From the IMG/VR virus record IMGVR_UViG_3300044625_001067, positions 1 to 64,000 of that record: a stretch of DNA of 64,000 nt. The stretch is one strand, 5' to 3'. A program made the position numbers and the translations under genes. Positions 40,528 to 63,612 of the stretch are shown piece after piece (the stretch's first letter is position 1; the number at the start of each line of letters is the position of its first letter). The notes beneath the pieces were generated by a model. It did no database searches. It saw nothing but the letters and a program-made list of their open reading frames with translations, and was not told where the DNA came from.

Positions 40528-40572
40528 GGGCGGTTACCCGCCCTTTTGCCCCTCGGCGAAACGGGCTATAGT
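40528..40572 (+). promoter_or_regulatory. composite promoter 1 of RNA island
   Basis: GGGCGGTTACCCGCC...TATAGT; no plausible ORF follows. Confidence 0.8.
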
Positions 40573-40600
40573 AAAGGAGTGGTTGAGAGCTTCGCTCCTC

Positions 40601-40787: not shown

Positions 40788-40831
40788 GGCGGGAAACCGC
40801 CCTTTACTCCCCTAGCCAAACAAGCTATAGT
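40788..40831 (+). promoter_or_regulatory. composite promoter 2 of RNA island
   Basis: GGCGGGAAACCGCC box, TTTACT, TATAGT 40826-31. Confidence 0.8.
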
Positions 40832-40911
40832 AAAGGGGTGGTTGAGAGAGCTTCGCTCCTCACTCTTTCCCCGGTCTCTCCGGGGGCAACTTGAAAATTT
40901 AAGATTTACAC

Positions 40912-41006
40912 ACACTGGTGAGTACACAGGTTGGGGTACGACCAAGTGCTACCGTGGTCGGGCTTTTACCCTGGTAAGGGGTGAAAGAGTTGGTAGCAGC
41001 CAGTGT
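40912..41006 (+). ncRNA. pseudoknotted multi-stem RNA of unknown class
   Basis: ACACTGG/CCAGTGT closing stem; three internal hairpins; loop TGCTACCG complementary to TGGTAGCA. Confidence 0.55.
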
Positions 41007-41017
41007 TAAGACCAAAA

Positions 41018-41140
41018 GGTTAACGAGAGAGAAAGATCACGGTTCGAGTCCGGATCCAGCAGTAATTGAGCCCGTCAAGGGCATTCCTAGCCATGGTTGC
41101 GGGGTAGTTTAAGTGGCCTAAAAACATTCTCTCTTTTACC
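41018..41140 (+). ncRNA. circularly permuted tRNA-like element 1
   Basis: Order: GAGAGAG, T arm (TTCGAGT), acceptor closed by a linker, TA-GTTT..AAAC D arm, TTCTCTC. Confidence 0.65.
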
Positions 41141-41219
41141 CAGGGGACAATGGCGGTCGCGGCTAACGCCAAGTGCGACTAAGCCACGTCTCATGACCCC
41201 GGTTGATCCCGGGGTATAC

Positions 41220-41422: not shown

Positions 41423-41548
41423 TGACTAAGAGTGTTAGAGGTTAGCATGTTCCTTTGGGCGAAAACAGTAAGATAGAACGAAGGCCAAGTTCCGTATCTG
41501 TGAGTAGTTTTGACAGAGGAGGTTGAGGTTCGAATCCTCGTTAGTCAC
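41423..41548 (+). ncRNA. tRNA-like RNA with ~50-nt hairpin insertion in the anticodon arm (Gln-like)
   Basis: TGACTAA/TTAGTCA acceptor, D arm, TGAGG-TTCGAAT-CCTCG T arm; extended anticodon arm. Confidence 0.7.
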
Positions 41549-42310: not shown

Positions 42311-42951
42311 TTGGAGTGAGATTCGAGAGTTAGTCGCCTCGATACCCGCAGGGGTATAGCTTAAAGACTCCCTAACAGAGCGCACTCAACCCCAGTTATC
42401 CCACGGCGCTGGTCGCATAGCCGAAGGCACTTCCTGAAGAAGGAACAACTACCGCTGGCGGACCTGGGGCGGTTTGTTGTAAAACAATTGGTATTCAGTA
42501 GCGTCTCGCGAGCAACGCTGATACAACCAGGTCCTGCGACCCTAAGTTAATGCCTCCACGTGGCAGGGTTGGTAACTTTCCCTTTAGGAAAGGCCAAATT
42601 AACAGGGAATTTCTCATCCCGTACGTGAGAAACCTCGACCAAGGTGAGAAGTCAGTCGCTCAGGACACTCTGGGAAAACCTGCCAAGGGTTAATTTGGAC
42701 GGAACTTTCATCCGTTACGTGAAAGCTCTCCTTTGGATTTCGAAGGAATCCGGGGTACTTTGACAGCGATTTGCTCTAAAACCTTCAACAGGTCTGGCAA
42801 TTCGGTGAGTTTGATTCCCGCTTACTCCATTGGATTTTCTCAAATCCGACACCCCCAGAAAAGTTTACTACCTTTGGTAGTGACTATAATGGATGAGTCA
42901 CTGCTCTGCTTGGGCGAAAGCTAAACGGATAACCGGACCGTTCAGCTCCAA
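42311..42951 (+). ncRNA. large ornate structured RNA (~640 nt) with several pseudoknots
   Basis: Terminal stem TTGGAGTGA/TCAGCTCCAA and many long-range complementarities (see findings); no credible ORF. Confidence 0.7.
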
Positions 42952-43552: not shown

Positions 43553-43668
43553 GAGGGAGAAATGCCGGTTCAAGTCCGGCTCTGGGGGTCCTATAACGTG
43601 GGGTCCTGGGTAGTTTAACTGGTGCCAAGGACTTGTTATCAGTACGCACAAGTCCAAAAACTTCTTTC
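43553..43668 (+). ncRNA. circularly permuted tRNA-like element 2, with hairpin inserted in the D loop
   Basis: GAGGGAG, GCCGG-TTCAAGT-CCGGC, closed acceptor hairpin, TA-GTTT-AACTGGT..[GGACTTGT/ACAAGTCC]..AAAC, TTCTTTC. Confidence 0.7.
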
Positions 43669-43674
43669 CCACAA

Positions 43675-43860: not shown

Positions 43861-43925
43861 GCGGTTAACCGTTTGCTCCGGGACGGTTTCCCGCCCTTTC
43901 ACCTTTCTGCGAAACGGGTTATAGT
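43861..43925 (+). promoter_or_regulatory. composite promoter 3 of RNA island
   Basis: GCGGTTAACCG and ACGGTTTCCCG boxes, TATAGT 43920-25. Confidence 0.8.
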
Positions 43926-44213: not shown

Positions 44214-44287
44214 TCTCTCATCGACTAATTGGTAATGTCACCGCCGGGTTACTGGTGGGAATCCAGGTTCGAACCCTGGTGAGAGTG
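44214..44287 (+). tRNA. tRNA-Asn(GTT)-like with 8-nt anticodon loop lacking U33
   Basis: CTCTCA/TGAGAG; CCGCC-GGGTTACT-GGTGG; CCAGG-TTCGAAC-CCTGG; G73. Confidence 0.7.
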
Positions 44288-44316
44288 TTTGCTCTAGTGT
44301 GCTAGAGTGATTAAAA

Positions 44317-44390
44317 GCCCGAGTAACCCAGCGGAAGAGGTGCCTGACTTAAAATCAGGAAGTCGTAGGGTTCGAATCCCACCTCGGGTA
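44317..44390 (+). tRNA. tRNA-Leu(TAA), short variable loop
   Basis: GCCCGAG/CTCGGGT; CCTGA-CTTAAAA-TCAGG; A73. Confidence 0.88.
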
Positions 44391-44441
44391 TTGCTCCTTT
44401 GACCTGGGCCTGGAAGCTCAGTGAATAAGGAACAAACAATC

Positions 44442-44516
44442 GCGTATGTACCCCAACCGGAAGAGGGGCAACACTGAGACTGTTGTTATGTGGAGGTTCG
44501 ACCCCTCTCATGCGCA
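44442..44516 (+). tRNA. tRNA-Leu(GAG), short variable loop
   Basis: GCGTATG/CATGCGC; CAACA-CTGAGAC-TGTTG. Confidence 0.85.
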
Positions 44517-44589
44517 TTTTCCTTTTACCACCCTTCACATAGTGGCGGTAGCTTGGAAAGAACCCTGCGGTTGAAAACCATGGGCAAAA

Positions 44590-44660
44590 TCTCGAATCGA
44601 CTAGTGGTAGGTCGCCTGTCTCTGAAACAGGAAACTTTGGTTCGAATCCAAATTTGAGAA
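44590..44660 (+). tRNA. tRNA-Gln(CTG)
   Basis: TCTCGAA/TTTGAGA; CCTGT-CTCTGAA-ACAGG. Confidence 0.9.
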
Positions 44661-44715
44661 TAACGTTTGGGGCACATCTATGTGCCCTTGCGTACGTTTC
44701 TCGTAGAGAAACCTT

Positions 44716-44804
44716 GGAAGAGTGGTCGAGTGGCTGATGACGATTGCTTGGAAAGCAATTGAGGCGCAAAAGCGTCTCCGGAGGTTCGAATCCTCTCTCT
44801 TCCG
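44716..44804 (+). tRNA. tRNA-Ser(GGA)
   Basis: GGAAGAG/CTCTTCC; loop TTGGAAA; long variable arm; G73. Confidence 0.95.
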
Positions 44805-44862
44805 TCTCACCTGAAAGTAGTACAGCAATAGGGTAAATTATAGGAGTCAATACGTATTTACC

Positions 44863-59853: not shown

Positions 59854-59965
59854 TGGGACCGGCAGGACTCGAACCTGCAACCGCGCCTTTAAAAGAGGTA
59901 ATTTAATTGCTGATGTATCTTTGTCAAGATAACTTTTCGTGCTCTACCAGTTGAGCTACGGTCCC
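59854..59965 (-). tRNA. tRNA-Lys(TTT) with 39-nt insertion in the anticodon stem
   Basis: GGGACCG/CGGTCCC; CG[39 nt]CCT-CTTTTAA-AGGCG; GCAGG-TTCGAGT-CCTGC. Confidence 0.8.
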
Positions 59966-60696
59966 GTATTTGATCCGAAAACTACCTGGAGCGATATTGA
60001 AAGTTTTTTCTCAGCCCCCTGAGCTACTCTCCAATGTTAATGGGTTCAAAGGTTAAGTTAAACCACTCCCCGTCAGAGTTACAGAACAAGAGCTTAGAGT
60101 CGCTATCGTCGGGGTAATACCAGATCAGCATGTTCTTTAACGATTTGTTTTGGGAGTTTTTGGGCAGGGTCTCACCTCGCTTCAGTCGATACAATACGTC
60201 ATGCCCTATCCCTTTACTCGGCACGTCTAACCGTATGCCCTTGTCACCGTCAAAACCTGCTTCAGTGGGTGTCATATCTTTTTGTTAGGTCTACGTTCGC
60301 TTGGCAAATTACTTGGATCGATAATAAAGGTGTTTAGCCCCCAAGTTCTAGAGCCTATATGAGTCCACACAAACATTCAGCATCAACACTTTTCTTTTGG
60401 GCAGGTTTTCACCGGGAAAAGAGTAAGGATGTAACTTCACACCCGTTTGATTTTCAGGGTTAGCATAGAAACAATTGTCATAGTAGTAGCTCGGAAGATC
60501 ATACTCGTCTTCGGGGTCGAGAACTGCTACAATGTCTTCCTTAATGCGAACTCTCCCTTCTACCTTAGTGAGGGGTATGTGATCGGGAGGTAAAGATAAG
60601 AGTACACCAACAACAACTTCCATGTTATCCGGGAAGTCGCTCAGTCTTTCCTTCAGGTCTTTTACTTTCATTCTGTTTACAAAGTCTGAGTTTAAC

Positions 60697-60746
60697 TAGA
60701 TAGTTGTTTTTCCCAAGAGAGTTAGGGTAAATCGCTGAACTATCTA
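60697..60746 (-). ncRNA. hairpin with TCAGC/AAAAACA internal-loop motif
   Basis: TAGATAGT-TCAGCGA...AAAAACA-ACTATCTA. Confidence 0.65.
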
Positions 60747-60764
60747 TGTTTGCCGAAGGCAAAG

Positions 60765-60886
60765 TCGAAGAGGCAAGATTCGAACTTGCGTATGGCGGTT
60801 CCTTTTGCGTATTGGGTAATTGCTGAATTACCTAAGCTAGGTAATCTTTTTGCATTACCACTGCCTAACCACTTGGCTACTCTTCG
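60765..60886 (-). ncRNA. tRNA scaffold whose anticodon loop is replaced by an AAAAAG-hairpin-TCAGCAATT module
   Basis: CGAAGAG/CTCTTCG; GCC-AAGTGGTTA-GGC; GTGGT/ACCGC; GCAAG-TTCGAAT-CTTGC. Confidence 0.8.
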
Positions 60887-61759: not shown

Positions 61760-62137
61760 TCACTTGGTTGACCTTGCATACAAATTCGACAGTAGCAGAA
61801 GCAGAATGAGTGACAAAATGGACACAGAGCCTAAGATTACGATTGGGCTAAACACTGAGAGCCATGGCCAGGTTATTTGCCCCGTTAATTTCAACCCGAG
61901 GAGGAGACCCTGGGCTGTCATTAACGAAACTGCGAGATTCTCAAACATTAGTTATTTCTCATGCGAAAGTAGTTGAAGAATCATCCAAAGGGCTCCCAAC
62001 CCAAGTAGAAAAATTGGCACAAGGGTTGGTGAAAGCACTGTGAGCCAGGGCCAGGAAACCTGACCCGTTACTTTCATAGTCATGAATACGGTTTGCAGAA
62101 CGATGCAGAGGGCACCCGGCAATTTGATCCAGATCAT
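61760..62137 (-). CDS. two tandem paralogous small membrane proteins (61952-62137 and 61760-61948)
   Basis: 'KVTGQVSWPWLTVLSP' vs 'KLTGQITWPWLSVFSP'; first overlaps the DUF2828 stop. Confidence 0.7.
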
Positions 62138-63612
62138 GCTCCTTCAGCAAATACGGCACCGACAGCGTCGTACCTTTCAGTGTAAACAGCGTCACGCATA
62201 GCCCCTACAGGCGTAATTACCCCGCCAGTAAGCACAGCTTTCAGGATTGAAGGGCTGCACCCGGAGACCAGGCAAGTTCCCGTGTCGTGCATTTTCATAG
62301 GTACGTTGCCGCTAGAGTTAACATTCCAGAAGACAAGTTCCGGCAAGGAATACCCAGCTTGAGCGTACTTGATTCGCACCGCCTCAAAGTTTGTCACTGA
62401 GTTGTTTCTGCAGCAGGAATCAAACTGCATGTCTGAGACAATGATGAGCTTGCGCGGCATTTCCCCCTCAGGAATATGGTTCATCGTGGCGGTAGCCAAC
62501 ACAAGATTGAAGACTGCTTGCAGGTCTGTATTCGCACCCCAGTCGGCCCGGCTAAGGTTACGAACACGCTCAGCAACGTTTCTCCCTGTAACCGACTGCA
62601 ACTGCGGTCTTCCGGAGAAGGTTAGGAACTTATCCTTCCATGCCCCGGTGTTACGCTCAGCGATGTACATCGCCAGCGAGATTGAAACCGCCATGGGCAT
62701 GCCGCCGTTATTTCCCATTGATCCTGAGACGTCGGCAATTACCAGGCCGTTCAGCTGCTCTCCTTCCATGTAGTTGGGTAGAGCCTCCCACATTAAGTTT
62801 AGAGTCTGATCGCTCCTCTCACCCCCGTAAAGGTACTTGTGCACGATCTCGTAAGGGTAGATCGTACCGGCATTGATTTTTGCCTCACCTTTCTCTACCG
62901 AGTCAAGGTAGGATTGGTAGCGGTCGCCGTCGCGCTTGGCGAAAGCTTTACGATACATGAAGCCTGCCCGAGAAGGCAACTTGCTATAGTCAATGCTTTC
63001 CCACTCACGGGCACACATTGGCTGCTCAACAATCTTGACTTGTGACCTGAGGGCAGTCAGTGCCTTGCGGTACTGCCTCTCGGTCCAACCCATTGCTTCG
63101 GCAATTTTTCGGCCAATCCTCTTAGAGTCCTGGCTGGAAGCGTTAATGGAAGGCAGCCACTTTGCCAGAAGTGAAACTGACTTTCCAACTTCCGTATTTA
63201 GGTCGGCGTTCAGTTGTGCCTTAATTGCTTCGAGTGCGATGCCCCAAACTAAGGTACCGTCAAGGGCTACCACATCATCCCAGCGACCGTACTGTGGAAT
63301 CAGGCTAACTAGCCTGGCACCAATTGCAGCATCATTTCGAACCAGCTCCTTGAAAACTTCTCGAAAGATCTTTCGCTCTCCCTGGCCCCCACGAATGTCG
63401 CGTGCCCAAAACAAGATTCGAGTTGCGGTCTCAGGGTCTTCTGCGTAGGCAAGGTTGAACAGTCGAGTTGCTTCGCTGATTTTGTCACGGCAAGCTGCAA
63501 TCTTTCCAAAAAGGTCCAGGCACTTAGACTCGGTGGACTTGTATGCCTTTGCACCGTTTGCAGTGGTAGTTTGGTTAAACTCGTTTTCGAGTGCGTTTAA
63601 AAAGGTTGTCAT
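62134..63612 (-). CDS. DUF2828 family protein (TROVE/Ro60-like helical domain + vWA)
   Basis: 'TANGA...ST..CLDLF', 'RDIRGGQGER', 'YGRWDD', 'AKWLPS', MIDAS 'DVSGSM', 'SDMQFD', 'VFWNV', 'VSGCSP'. Confidence 0.88.
   Translation of the reverse strand: MTTFLNALENEFNQTTTANGAKAYKSTESKCLDLFGKIAACRDKISEATRLFNLAYAEDPETATRILFWARDIRGGQGERKIFREVFKELVRNDAAIGARLVSLIPQYGRWDDVVALDGTLVWGIALEAIKAQLNADLNTEVGKSVSLLAKWLPSINASSQDSKRIGRKIAEAMGWTERQYRKALTALRSQVKIVEQPMCAREWESIDYSKLPSRAGFMYRKAFAKRDGDRYQSYLDSVEKGEAKINAGTIYPYEIVHKYLYGGERSDQTLNLMWEALPNYMEGEQLNGLVIADVSGSMGNNGGMPMAVSISLAMYIAERNTGAWKDKFLTFSGRPQLQSVTGRNVAERVRNLSRADWGANTDLQAVFNLVLATATMNHIPEGEMPRKLIIVSDMQFDSCCRNNSVTNFEAVRIKYAQAGYSLPELVFWNVNSSGNVPMKMHDTGTCLVSGCSPSILKAVLTGGVITPVGAMRDAVYTERYDAVGAVFAEGA

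What the first reader, a model, noticed from the sequence alone, without database searches (positions are those of the whole stretch)
41018..41140. Circularly permuted tRNA-like RNA 1 (YrlA-like topology)
Seen: the T arm precedes the D arm, the acceptor strands TCCAGCAG/TTGCGGGG are joined by a hairpin-containing linker, and the ends pair at the anticodon position (GAGAGAG/TTCTCTC, extendable to GGT/ACC). Established: this T-acceptor-D order is that of bacterial YrlA Y RNAs and of permuted tRNA genes in some algae and archaea. Inference: a Y-RNA-like partner for a Ro-type protein, or a permuted tRNA needing ligation at the anticodon loop.
Basis: partly seen in the sequence, partly recalled or inferred. 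Interest (0 to 1): 0.78.

Follow-up and report, generated by a model that had tools for sequence, protein, structure and literature searches.

The report
Permuted tRNA-like Y-type RNA in cyanophage
A giant lake cyanophage makes a small RNA shaped like a tRNA whose parts are in rotated order, one of a conserved, previously unannotated family that sits in phage tRNA gene arrays and most likely partners with the phage's own Ro60-like ring protein.

Summary
Window 41025-41135 (+) encodes a tRNA-like RNA in the order end-stem, T arm, closed acceptor-like stem, D arm, end-stem.

It is not chance. A covariance model built only from its relatives finds it full-length (37.6 bits, E 4e-7). The family alignment has 24 of 32 pairs with compensatory changes. 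Orthologues in other phages keep every helix with different sequences. Four lake metatranscriptomes contain it as RNA.

The window is the start of a 277-kb jumbo cyanophage with about 50 tRNAs. It has two paralogues: 43553-43670 and genome position about 141.3 kb. The cultured Synechococcus phage B3 has an unannotated copy.

The topology is that of YrlA Y RNAs. However, the Rfam YrlA model does not reach it, the GNCGAA Ro-binding motif is absent, and here it lies 21 kb from the DUF2828 gene.

That gene's product folds like Ro60: its top 13 PDB matches are all Ro60/TROVE. In relatives it sits in the same co-oriented tRNA array, 3-4 kb from the RNA.

Best reading: a divergent, tRNA-array-embedded Y-RNA-like partner of a Ro-like protein. 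Binding is untested. I found no support for a permuted tRNA that matures by ligation. It is a new variant of a known kind.

The parts
40803..40831 (+). sigma-70-like promoter (TTTACT, 17 nt, TATAGT) of the transcript that carries the element
   Evidence: Consensus scan. A paralogous promoter upstream has RNA contigs of two runs starting at 40577. One RNA contig covering the element starts at 40809; the others start at 40865-40911.
41010..41021 (+). small 5' hairpin P0 (GACC AAAA GGTT) just before the end stem
   Evidence: Present in the long-context MFE fold. Orthologues L174, L176 and L106 have a hairpin of unrelated sequence at the same position.
41025..41033 (+). P1 5' strand (GAGAGAGAA), the anticodon-stem analogue formed with the 3' end
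   Evidence: It covaries with the 3' strand in L174, L176 and L106a.
41035..41056 (+). T arm: stem 41035-38 plus 41040-42 pairs with 41050-56, A41039 bulged, loop TTCGAGT
   Evidence: Sequence. The T-loop positions are invariant in 18 distinct family members. The C-G pair 41040/41052 becomes T-A in L176, with the bulge kept.
41055..41104 (+). closed acceptor-like stem: strands 41055-61 and 41098-104, with a conserved linker holding hairpins 41070-82 and 41086-96
   Evidence: 6 of 7 positions pair. The G-A mismatch at 41058 is a G-T wobble in L174. The linker is nearly identical in L174 and L176, and L176 has a paired C/G insertion that lengthens the 41086-96 hairpin.
41105..41125 (+). TA (tRNA positions 8-9) and D arm: stem GTTT/AAAC, loop AAGTGGCCTAA
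   Evidence: U8, A14, A15 and G18 are kept in 18/18 family members, A9 in 17/18 and G19 in 15/18.
41127..41135 (+). P1 3' strand (TTCTCTCTT)
   Evidence: RNA contigs of four runs end at 41140-41163.
43553..43670 (+). paralogue C2: same architecture plus a 7-bp hairpin inserted in the D loop, followed after 4 nt by tRNA-Asp
   Evidence: 129 bits with model R1; a training row of R1. Variants in L107, L129, L134 and L152.
62134..63612 (-). DUF2828+DUF7788 (vWA) protein, a Ro60-like candidate protein partner
   Evidence: Pfam. PHROG 'RNA-binding protein'. AF2 model pLDDT 70; the top 13 Foldseek PDB hits are Ro60/TROVE.

Best explanation
Window 41025-41135 encodes a roughly 110-nt non-coding RNA that is a circularly permuted tRNA mimic.

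Structure. Its 5' and 3' ends pair to form a 9-bp stem at the place of the anticodon stem. Then follow a T arm, an acceptor-like stem closed by a conserved linker, and a D arm. The nucleotides that build the tRNA elbow are kept.

Setting. It belongs to a family of such RNAs that sit, often in several copies, inside the tRNA gene arrays of freshwater jumbo cyanophages and other tRNA-rich phages. They are transcribed with the tRNAs from sigma-70-type promoters. Their ends are probably set by processing of the neighbouring tRNAs.

Proposed function. It most likely acts as a Y-RNA-like (YrlA-like) cofactor of the phage's Ro60-like ring protein (DUF2828 plus vWA). That gene lies about 8.5 kb downstream of an Rnl2-type RNA ligase gene on the same strand, and a second (Rnl1-type) ligase lies further on. 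In the proposed model, the end stem and short tails dock on the protein. The tRNA-shaped module recruits or competes for a tRNA-recognising enzyme. The complex would then serve surveillance, repair or protection of the phage's and host's tRNA pool during infection.

Shown: the structure, its conservation and covariation, its expression, the Ro60-like fold of the protein, and genomic linkage in relatives. Inferred: the RNA-protein binding and the downstream function.
For: Structure and family:
- Model R1, built without this sequence, finds it at 37.6 bits, E 3.7e-7.
- Family alignment A4 has 18 distinct sequences. 90.7% of cells are paired against 69.8% in shuffles, 24/32 pairs change on both sides, and the slide control peaks sharply at 0.
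- Orthologues of this subtype (L174, L176/L177, L106a) keep P1 as 8-12 bp helices of different sequence, a compensatory T-stem change and the bulged A.
- Elbow nucleotides are conserved.

Expression:
- Contigs of four lake metatranscriptomes span 40865/40911 to 41140/41163.
- Flanking coding DNA and the canonical tRNA cluster at 44225-44852 have about zero depth.

YrlA link:
- The topology is the same (PMC4201824; 10.1101/312249).
- The Rfam YrlA model aligns full-length to distant family members at 26-34 bits.

Protein:
- The DUF2828 protein's top 13 PDB fold matches are Ro60/TROVE, E 1e-7 to 3e-3.
- Mycobacteriophage homologues are annotated 'Ro-like RNA binding protein'.

Linkage:
- In contigs G011 and G012 the DUF2828 gene lies in the same co-oriented tRNA array, 3.2-3.8 kb from the RNA.
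- Gabriela has a same-topology RNA 130 nt after the gene.
- Salmonella phage Mushroom has one 1.1 kb downstream.
- Phage B3 has both the RNA and the gene.
- The relative S-CBWM1 has neither.
- An Rnl2-NADAR-Band_7-DUF2828 neighbourhood is seen in relative L172. Rnl2 and Rnl1 are in this genome.
- Precedent: Thermus phage phiLo Ro60 binds phage-encoded Y-like RNAs (PMC12135203).
Against: - Rfam YrlA gives no hit at the element.
- The GNCGAAN0-1G motif proposed as the Ro-binding site is absent and no P1 sequence is conserved across the wider family.
- In this genome the RNA is 21 kb from the DUF2828 gene on the opposite strand.
- In G011 and G012 the proximity may only reflect that both lie in the tRNA array.
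- Contig G013 holds the RNA, but no DUF2828 gene was found in its 91 kb.
- R1 found no convincing copy near the DUF2828 genes of Listeria A511, Bacillus Chewbecca, Vibrio CZ01 or a Staphylococcus phage.
- No binding data exist. The complex predictor gave no verdict for RNA.
- One tRNA-dimer false positive reached 34 bits with R1, so the score alone is not proof. The covariation in the orthologues is what carries the case.
Confidence: 0.5

Rival explanations
1. Two-piece tRNA mimic. RNase P cuts in the acceptor loop, the 3' strand is trimmed and receives CCA, as shown for M. smegmatis YrlA. The result is a nicked tRNA-shaped molecule with a free acceptor end and no anticodon loop. It would act independently of Ro, for instance as a decoy or competitor for enzymes or defence toxins that act on tRNA acceptor ends or elbows, or it might even be aminoacylated.
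For: - Many family members have a perfect 7-bp acceptor-like stem closed by only 3-7 nt (C3, L128, L140, L114, Gabriela, Mushroom). This is the feature that made M. smegmatis YrlA an RNase P substrate (PMC4201824).
- In C3 and L106b the loop reads UCCAU, that is discriminator plus CCA.
- Paralogue C2 is not assembled in the RNA runs although C1 is. That would fit cleavage into short pieces.
Against: - The element of the finding has an imperfect acceptor stem and a long, conserved 36-nt linker.
- RNA contigs run uninterrupted through that linker.
- CCA in the loop is not conserved: UCAAU, UGAAU and CCUGG also occur.
- There are no end-mapping data.
Confidence: 0.2
2. A cis-acting structural module of the tRNA operon transcript. 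In this reading it is a tRNA-shaped spacer that guides or paces RNase P/Z/E processing, or stabilises the precursor, and has no trans-acting role.
For: - It is always embedded between tRNAs on the same strand.
- The downstream tRNA often starts 0-4 nt after P1: C2, L128 and L136a before tRNA-Asp; L176 and L106a before tRNA-Gly.
- A small hairpin regularly precedes P1.
Against: - Strong conservation of elbow nucleotides, and of the acceptor linker sequence in the C1 subtype, is more than a spacer needs.
- It accumulates in metatranscriptomes more than its flanks.
- In Gabriela a same-topology RNA stands alone after the Ro-like gene, with no tRNA gene annotated within the 7.4 kb examined around it.
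Confidence: 0.12
3. A genuine circularly permuted tRNA gene. The ends would be joined (for example by the phage's Rnl1 or Rnl2) to create an anticodon loop, and the acceptor loop opened to give a working tRNA.
For: - The 3' half lies before the 5' half.
- The phage encodes two RNA ligases.
- Back-joints exist elsewhere in the RNA contigs of this region.
Against: - There is no back-joint at this element.
- P1 is 5-12 bp long with unrelated flanks, and no conserved 7-nt loop halves or bulge-helix-bulge motif are present.
- The acceptor stem of this member is imperfect.
- No RtcB is encoded.
Confidence: 0.04
4. Not a functional unit: a chance juxtaposition or decayed junction of two tRNA genes (T arm of one, D arm of the next).
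For: - Dimeric tRNAs mimic the T-then-D order. The YrlA authors warned of this (PMC4201824).
- One such dimer scored 34 bits with R1.
- The region holds many orphan T arms.
Against: - No tRNA is detected on either side, even at E 10.
- The strands that would belong to two different tRNAs pair with each other and covary in orthologues from other phages.
- The sequence is invariant across four RNA runs while its 5' flank varies.
Confidence: 0.03

Closest known systems
YrlA Y RNAs of bacteria and mycobacteriophages (Rfam RF02553; Chen et al. 2014, PMC4201824; structure PDB 6cu1, bioRxiv 10.1101/312249)
   Same: - Same connectivity: ends form the anticodon-like stem, then T stem-loop, closed acceptor-like stem-loop, D stem-loop.
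- tRNA tertiary nucleotides are kept, including A15:U48.
- Size is about 100-130 nt.
- The genome encodes a Ro60-fold protein.
- Some members have 7-bp acceptor stems like M. smegmatis YrlA.
   Different: - It scores below any threshold with RF02553.
[quoted passage not shown]
- It lies inside tRNA arrays, in 2-3 copies per genome, rather than next to rsr.
- The protein is of the DUF2828 type, not Pfam TROVE.
- Some members carry a hairpin in the D loop.
- Binding is untested.
Thermus phage phiLo Ro60 with phage-encoded Yrl1/Yrl2 (PMC12135203)
   Same: A phage that encodes both a Ro60-fold protein and small Y-like RNAs. The phiLo Ro60 structure (9l5y) is among the best fold matches of the DUF2828 protein here.
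   Different: I did not compare the RNAs of phiLo with this family. The phiLo protein is a recognisable Ro60, and in vitro it forms complexes with host PNPase. Nothing of that kind is known here.
Circularly permuted tRNA genes of Cyanidioschyzon merolae, other algae and Thermofilum pendens (cited in 10.1101/312249)
   Same: The 3' half is encoded before the 5' half. The acceptor is closed in the primary transcript and the ends pair.
   Different: Those mature through a bulge-helix-bulge cut, circularisation and acceptor opening to become real tRNAs with an anticodon loop. Here there is no such motif, no junction and no conserved anticodon.
Two-piece (permuted) tmRNA
   Same: The T arm and 3' acceptor strand precede the 5' acceptor strand, and the ends pair. 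This phage itself has a permuted tmRNA.
   Different: - It has no tag reading frame or pseudoknots and is only about 110 nt long.
- It has no G3-U70.
- The Rfam tmRNA models give no hit.

Membership tests
YrlA / bacterial Y RNA | Order: end-stem 5' strand, T stem-loop, closed acceptor-like stem-loop, D stem-loop, end-stem 3' strand | tested here: met
   Compared with nt 15-27, 33-49, 50-64, 67-81 and 83-93 of S. Typhimurium YrlA (10.1101/312249).
YrlA / bacterial Y RNA | tRNA elbow and core nucleotides (T loop UUCRANU, U8, A14, R15:Y48, G18G19) | tested here: met
   Column counts on 18 distinct family members: 15/18 to 18/18 at each of these positions (G19 15/18, U48 17/18, the rest 18/18). 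The element itself has all of them.
YrlA / bacterial Y RNA | Reaches the Rfam RF02553 gathering score (69 bits) | tested here: not met
   No hit at 41018-41140 even at E 10. Distant relatives reach 26-34 bits full-length.
YrlA / bacterial Y RNA | GNCGAAN0-1G motif near the 5' end (putative Ro60 contact) | tested here: not met
   The 5' part reads GGTTAACGAGAGAG. The orthologues have unrelated 5' strands.
YrlA / bacterial Y RNA | Encoded within about 4 kb of the Ro60 gene on the same strand | tested here: inconclusive
   Not met in this genome: 21 kb apart, on opposite strands. Met for orthologues in G011 (3.8 kb) and G012 (3.2 kb), and for Gabriela (130 nt). In all cases this is with a DUF2828-type Ro-like gene, not Pfam TROVE.
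YrlA / bacterial Y RNA | Bound by the Ro60 orthologue | not testable with these tools
   Complex prediction gives no verdict for protein-RNA pairs.
Circularly permuted tRNA gene | 3' half upstream of 5' half, acceptor closed in the transcript | tested here: met
Circularly permuted tRNA gene | End-joined (circular) intermediate | tested here: inconclusive
   No back-joint at the element in the contigs of four RNA runs. Contigs drop rare forms.
Circularly permuted tRNA gene | Joining the ends yields a 5-bp stem with a 7-nt anticodon loop | tested here: not met
   The end stem is 5-12 bp, with non-conserved flanks of variable length.
Two-piece tmRNA | G3-U70 pair, tag reading frame, pseudoknots | tested here: not met
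   Position 3:70 is C-G here and U-A or C-G in relatives. There is no room for a frame. No Rfam tmRNA hit.
Ordinary tRNA or tRNA dimer | Complete cloverleaf tRNA on either side of the junction | tested here: not met
   ARAGORN and the Rfam tRNA model find nothing between 40300 and 41219.
Ro60/TROVE proteins (for the DUF2828 protein) | Alpha-helical ring domain followed by a vWA domain; fold match to solved Ro60 | tested here: met
   All-alpha residues 1-280 plus an alpha/beta C-terminal domain. A weak VWA_2 hit. The top 13 Foldseek PDB matches are Ro60/TROVE over about 510-570 columns. The Pfam TROVE model itself does not hit.

The most novel reading that the evidence does not exclude
These RNAs and the DUF2828 proteins together form a widespread but undescribed phage ribonucleoprotein. 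DUF2828 proteins are found in about 700 sequenced phages, including Felix O1-like, A511-like, T4-like vibriophages, cluster J mycobacteriophages and jumbo cyanophages. On this reading they are a divergent Ro60 branch whose genes are physically tied to tRNA arrays. Their partners would be permuted tRNA mimics hidden inside those arrays and missed by tRNA finders, by Rfam, and by the original YrlA survey, which discarded hits overlapping tandem tRNA genes. The particle would protect or repair the tRNA pool, or blunt tRNA-targeting host defences, during infection.
Probability: 0.3. Interest if true: 0.75.

Novelty: new variant of a known kind. Interest (0 to 1): 0.6.

Why it matters
Phage tRNA arrays are usually read as lists of tRNAs plus 'pseudo-tRNAs'. 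This case shows that they also hide conserved, expressed tRNA mimics of the Y-RNA type.

It also ties those mimics to a large family of phage proteins (DUF2828) that nobody has studied experimentally. Here that protein is shown to have the Ro60 fold.

This gives a concrete, testable RNA partner for the protein family. A cultured system, Synechococcus phage B3, carries both parts.

It extends Ro/Y-RNA biology to cyanophages and tRNA-rich phages in general. It also flags a blind spot of Rfam YrlA and of tRNA annotation pipelines.

Tried and rejected
- Rfam at gathering and at E 10, and the YrlA model over the whole genome: no hit at the site. The weak YrlA hits were tRNA-tRNA junctions.
- MFE folding alone: z = -1.76, and the MFE fold misses the acceptor and D stems.
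- An upstream partner ACTGGTG (40914) for the 3' acceptor strand, which would make a 150-nt normal-order tRNA. Rejected because that segment pairs better within the separate structure 40912-41006, and because orthologues lack that upstream module.
- blastn and megablast against phage records and against relatives G001-G009: only the promoter repeat matched. G001 and G002 lack the 1-45.6 kb part.
- Flanking-protein searches: found only identical copies.
- First motif scan of viral contigs: mostly chance hits, but it gave L099.
- Single-sequence AF2 model of the DUF2828 protein: unusable, pLDDT 40. Redone with 51 homologues.
- phmmer against PDB sequences: nothing.
- Complex prediction of protein plus RNA: no verdict is offered for RNA.
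- The 280-kb relative L172 could not be searched whole.
- R1 around the DUF2828 genes of Chewbecca, CZ01, CP30A and a Staphylococcus phage: only tRNA dimers, plus one ambiguous hit in the unannotated gap upstream of the CP30A gene.
- Listeria A511: the hit is a tRNA dimer.
- RtcB is absent.
- Supplementary phage list of Chen et al.: not held.

Full report
**What the window is.**
- The 64-kb window is the start of a 277-kb virus record. CheckV estimates it as 98% complete.
- It has about 50 tRNA genes and a permuted tmRNA.
- Its large terminase is 60% identical to that of Synechococcus phage S-CBWM1.
- Near-identical DNA occurs in many lake-water metagenomes.
- The stretch 40.1-44.9 kb is almost free of long ORFs. 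It carries nine detectable tRNAs and about ten further 'orphan' T arms.

**The observation.**
These are a T hairpin (41035-41056, loop TTCGAGT), two strands that pair like an acceptor stem (41055-61 with 41098-104, 6 of 7 positions), a linker with a GCCC/GGGC hairpin (41070-82), TA plus a D arm (41105-25), and pairing of the two ends.
- Folding alone is unimpressive (z = -1.76). Neither Rfam nor ARAGORN reports anything here, even at E 10. The Rfam YrlA model run over the whole genome picked up only tRNA-tRNA junctions.
- Those junction hits point to an obvious artefact: in a tRNA array the T arm of one gene followed by the D arm of the next mimics this order. The YrlA authors themselves warned about this (PMC4201824).

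**Paralogues and homologues.**
- A self-comparison showed that the block GGGTAGTTTAA recurs next to two other orphan T arms: window 43.6 kb and genome 141.3 kb, minus strand.
- All three share a purine-rich 5' strand, AAU or AAG, a T arm, a closed acceptor-like hairpin, GGUAGUUUAA..GG, AAAAAC and a pyrimidine-rich 3' strand.
- Motif scans of viral and metagenome contigs then recovered many more copies from other phages.
- Among them are members with unrelated stem sequences, such as P1 ACCCAA/UUGGGU with acceptor stem CCUUCCG/CGGGAGG.

**Test of the structure.**
- I built covariance model R1 from eight sequences of the C2/C3 type, leaving out the element of the finding. On that alignment, 15 of 32 pairs already change on both sides, and no shuffle of 500 reaches the observed values.
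- Searched over 516 kb of this phage and two relatives, R1 finds the element full-length at 41017-41140. It scores 37.6 bits, E 3.7e-7, and ranks third after the two paralogues. Everything else is at or below 20 bits.
- An alignment of 20 matches (18 distinct) has 90.7% of cells paired against 69.8% in shuffles. 24 of 32 pairs have compensatory changes, and the slide control peaks sharply at 0. That alignment is fitted to the model and so leans towards it.
- One tRNA dimer reached 34 bits, so I looked for orthologues of this particular subtype.
- L174, L176/L177 and L106a/L175 come from other phage contigs. They keep the extended T stem with its bulged A and show a C-G to U-A change in the stem.
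- In L174 the one G-A mismatch of the acceptor stem becomes a G-U wobble.
- Their end stems are 8-12 bp long and differ in sequence: AGAGGGAA/UUCCCUCU, AGAAGGAAA/UUUCCUUCU and UUAGAAAAGGA/UUCUUUUCUAA.
- The 36-nt acceptor linker is nearly invariant in L174 and L176, which suggests a function of its own.
- The elbow and core nucleotides are conserved in 15 to 18 of 18 members: U8, A14, A15 with U48, G18G19, and the T loop UUCRANU.

- The end stem is GAGAGAGAA/TTCTCTCTT, in the register two bases further on.
- GGT at 41018-20 belongs to a small 5' hairpin that is conserved in position, not to a GGT/ACC extension.
- The eighth acceptor pair is not conserved.

**Expression.**
- Contigs from four lake metatranscriptomes cover 40809/40865/40875/40911 to 41140/41161/41145/41163, with no differences inside the element.
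- Depth is about zero over the flanking coding DNA and over the canonical tRNA cluster at 44.2-44.9 kb.
- A sigma-70-like promoter lies at 40803-40831. Contigs of two runs start at 40577, downstream of a paralogous promoter.
- No back-joint was seen at the element.
- Back-joints elsewhere (41548 to 40911; 42310 to 42176 or 42227) may reflect strain rearrangements or ligation. I could not decide between these.

**Comparison with YrlA.**
- The connectivity equals that of YrlA: ends forming the anticodon-like stem, then the T, acceptor-like and D stem-loops (PMC4201824; 10.1101/312249).
- The Rfam YrlA model aligns full-length to distant members of the family (L142 33.9, L108 33.8, L153 26.4 bits) but far below its 69-bit threshold.
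- The GNCGAAN0-1G motif is absent.
- The RNA sits in tRNA arrays in several copies rather than beside rsr.

**The candidate protein partner.**
- The gene at 62134-63612 (minus strand) encodes DUF2828 plus DUF7788. Its PHROG family is named 'RNA-binding protein'.
- The Pfam TROVE model does not hit anywhere in the genome.
- A model built from 51 homologues (pLDDT 70) has Ro60/TROVE structures as its top 13 PDB matches: Thermus phage phiLo Ro60, D. radiodurans Rsr, and frog and human Ro60.
- Homologues occur in about 700 phage records.
- In seven of the ten genomes and contigs examined the gene lies next to or inside a tRNA array, and in A511 also near RtcB. This window's own copy has tRNAs 2-7 kb downstream on the same strand. 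Gabriela, Vibrio CZ01 and Campylobacter CP30A show no annotated tRNA within 3-4 kb of the gene.
- In a 280-kb relative the neighbourhood reads Rnl2, NADAR, Band_7, DUF2828.
- This genome also encodes Rnl2 and Rnl1 ligases but no RtcB.

**Linkage of RNA and gene.**
- In G011 and G012 the RNA lies 3.8 and 3.2 kb upstream of the gene, in one co-oriented array.
- In mycobacteriophage Gabriela a same-topology RNA fills the gap 130 nt after the 'Ro-like' gene.
- In Salmonella phage Mushroom one lies 1.1 kb downstream, in an unannotated gap of the array.
- Phage B3 has both. Its RNA is unannotated, between tRNA-Lys and tRNA-Trp.
- S-CBWM1 has neither.
- Contig G013 has the RNA, but no DUF2828 gene was found in its 91 kb.
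- Several other DUF2828 phages gave no clear hit with R1, whose reach across lineages is limited.

**Verdict.**
- The element is a real, conserved and expressed circularly permuted tRNA mimic of YrlA-like architecture. My confidence in this is about 0.9.
- That it works as a Y-RNA-like partner of the Ro60-like DUF2828 protein is the best-supported mechanism, at about 0.5. It rests on topology, protein fold and gene linkage, not on binding data.
[quoted passage not shown] A purely cis-acting role in operon processing comes next.
- A true permuted tRNA and a chance tRNA junction are both unlikely.
- I rate it a new variant of a known kind.

Noticed in passing
window 59854-59965 (-), about 60690-60810 (-), 41423-41548 (+): tRNA-like genes with inserts of roughly 40-50 nt.
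- One is a 112-nt Rfam tRNA hit 2.2 kb downstream of the DUF2828 gene. Phage B3 has a 110-nt 'tRNA-Pseudo-GCA' about 390 nt after its own DUF2828 gene.
- Two are T arms whose perfect acceptor partners lie 97 and 101 nt upstream instead of about 48 nt.
The nature of the inserts is unknown.
   Followed up: partly
window 45600 and genome position 143642: The 98-kb segment between these points is inverted between strains. This record and contigs L003 and L004 have one order. G001, G002 and metagenome contig L107 have the other, which would join the two tRNA clusters into one.
   Followed up: partly
window 41548>40911, 42310>42176, 42310>42227: RNA-run contigs join these points 'backwards' with 1-5 extra letters (C, CACCA). 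They start from the 3' ends of tRNA-like units. These could be strain rearrangements, or ligation or circularisation by the phage's Rnl1/Rnl2.
   Followed up: no
window 40540-40572, 40803-40831, about 43895-43925: Repeated sigma-70-like promoter modules: a GGCGG..CCGCC hairpin, TTTAC, 17 nt, TATAGT, and a GTGGTTGAGAG leader. The motif GGCAACTTGAAAATTTAA recurs just upstream of tRNA genes at 40885 and four times in the 135-141 kb cluster.
   Followed up: partly
window 40912-41006: A branched structured segment directly upstream of the element and co-assembled with it in RNA contigs. It is not present upstream of the orthologues in other phages.
   Followed up: partly
window 42539-42604 (+): A weak match to the HDV-like ribozyme family of F. 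prausnitzii: 25.6 bits against a gathering score of 44.
   Followed up: no
genome 104340-104723 (-), outside the window: Permuted (two-piece) tmRNA gene with tag ANNIVKFERIAVAV. Relative G001 has one too.
   Followed up: no
L106 8899-8935 and L099 2058-2094: abiF RNA motif hits above the gathering score (53.8 and 51.5 bits, against 37). They lie at the start of tRNA arrays that also hold the permuted RNAs.
   Followed up: no
L159 1498-2049 (Listeria phage A511): A ROOL RNA-like match (87.5 bits, gathering score 99.1) about 950 nt upstream of the DUF2828 gene, with an RtcB-type ligase 1.3 kb downstream of it.
   Followed up: no
L186 2726-3995 (Campylobacter phage CP30A) and L184 3390-3998 (Bacillus phage Chewbecca): Unannotated gaps of 1.3 kb and 0.6 kb directly upstream of DUF2828 genes. 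The CP30A gap holds a T arm followed by acceptor-, D- and anticodon-arm-like elements. It could be unannotated tRNAs or another tRNA-like RNA.
   Followed up: partly
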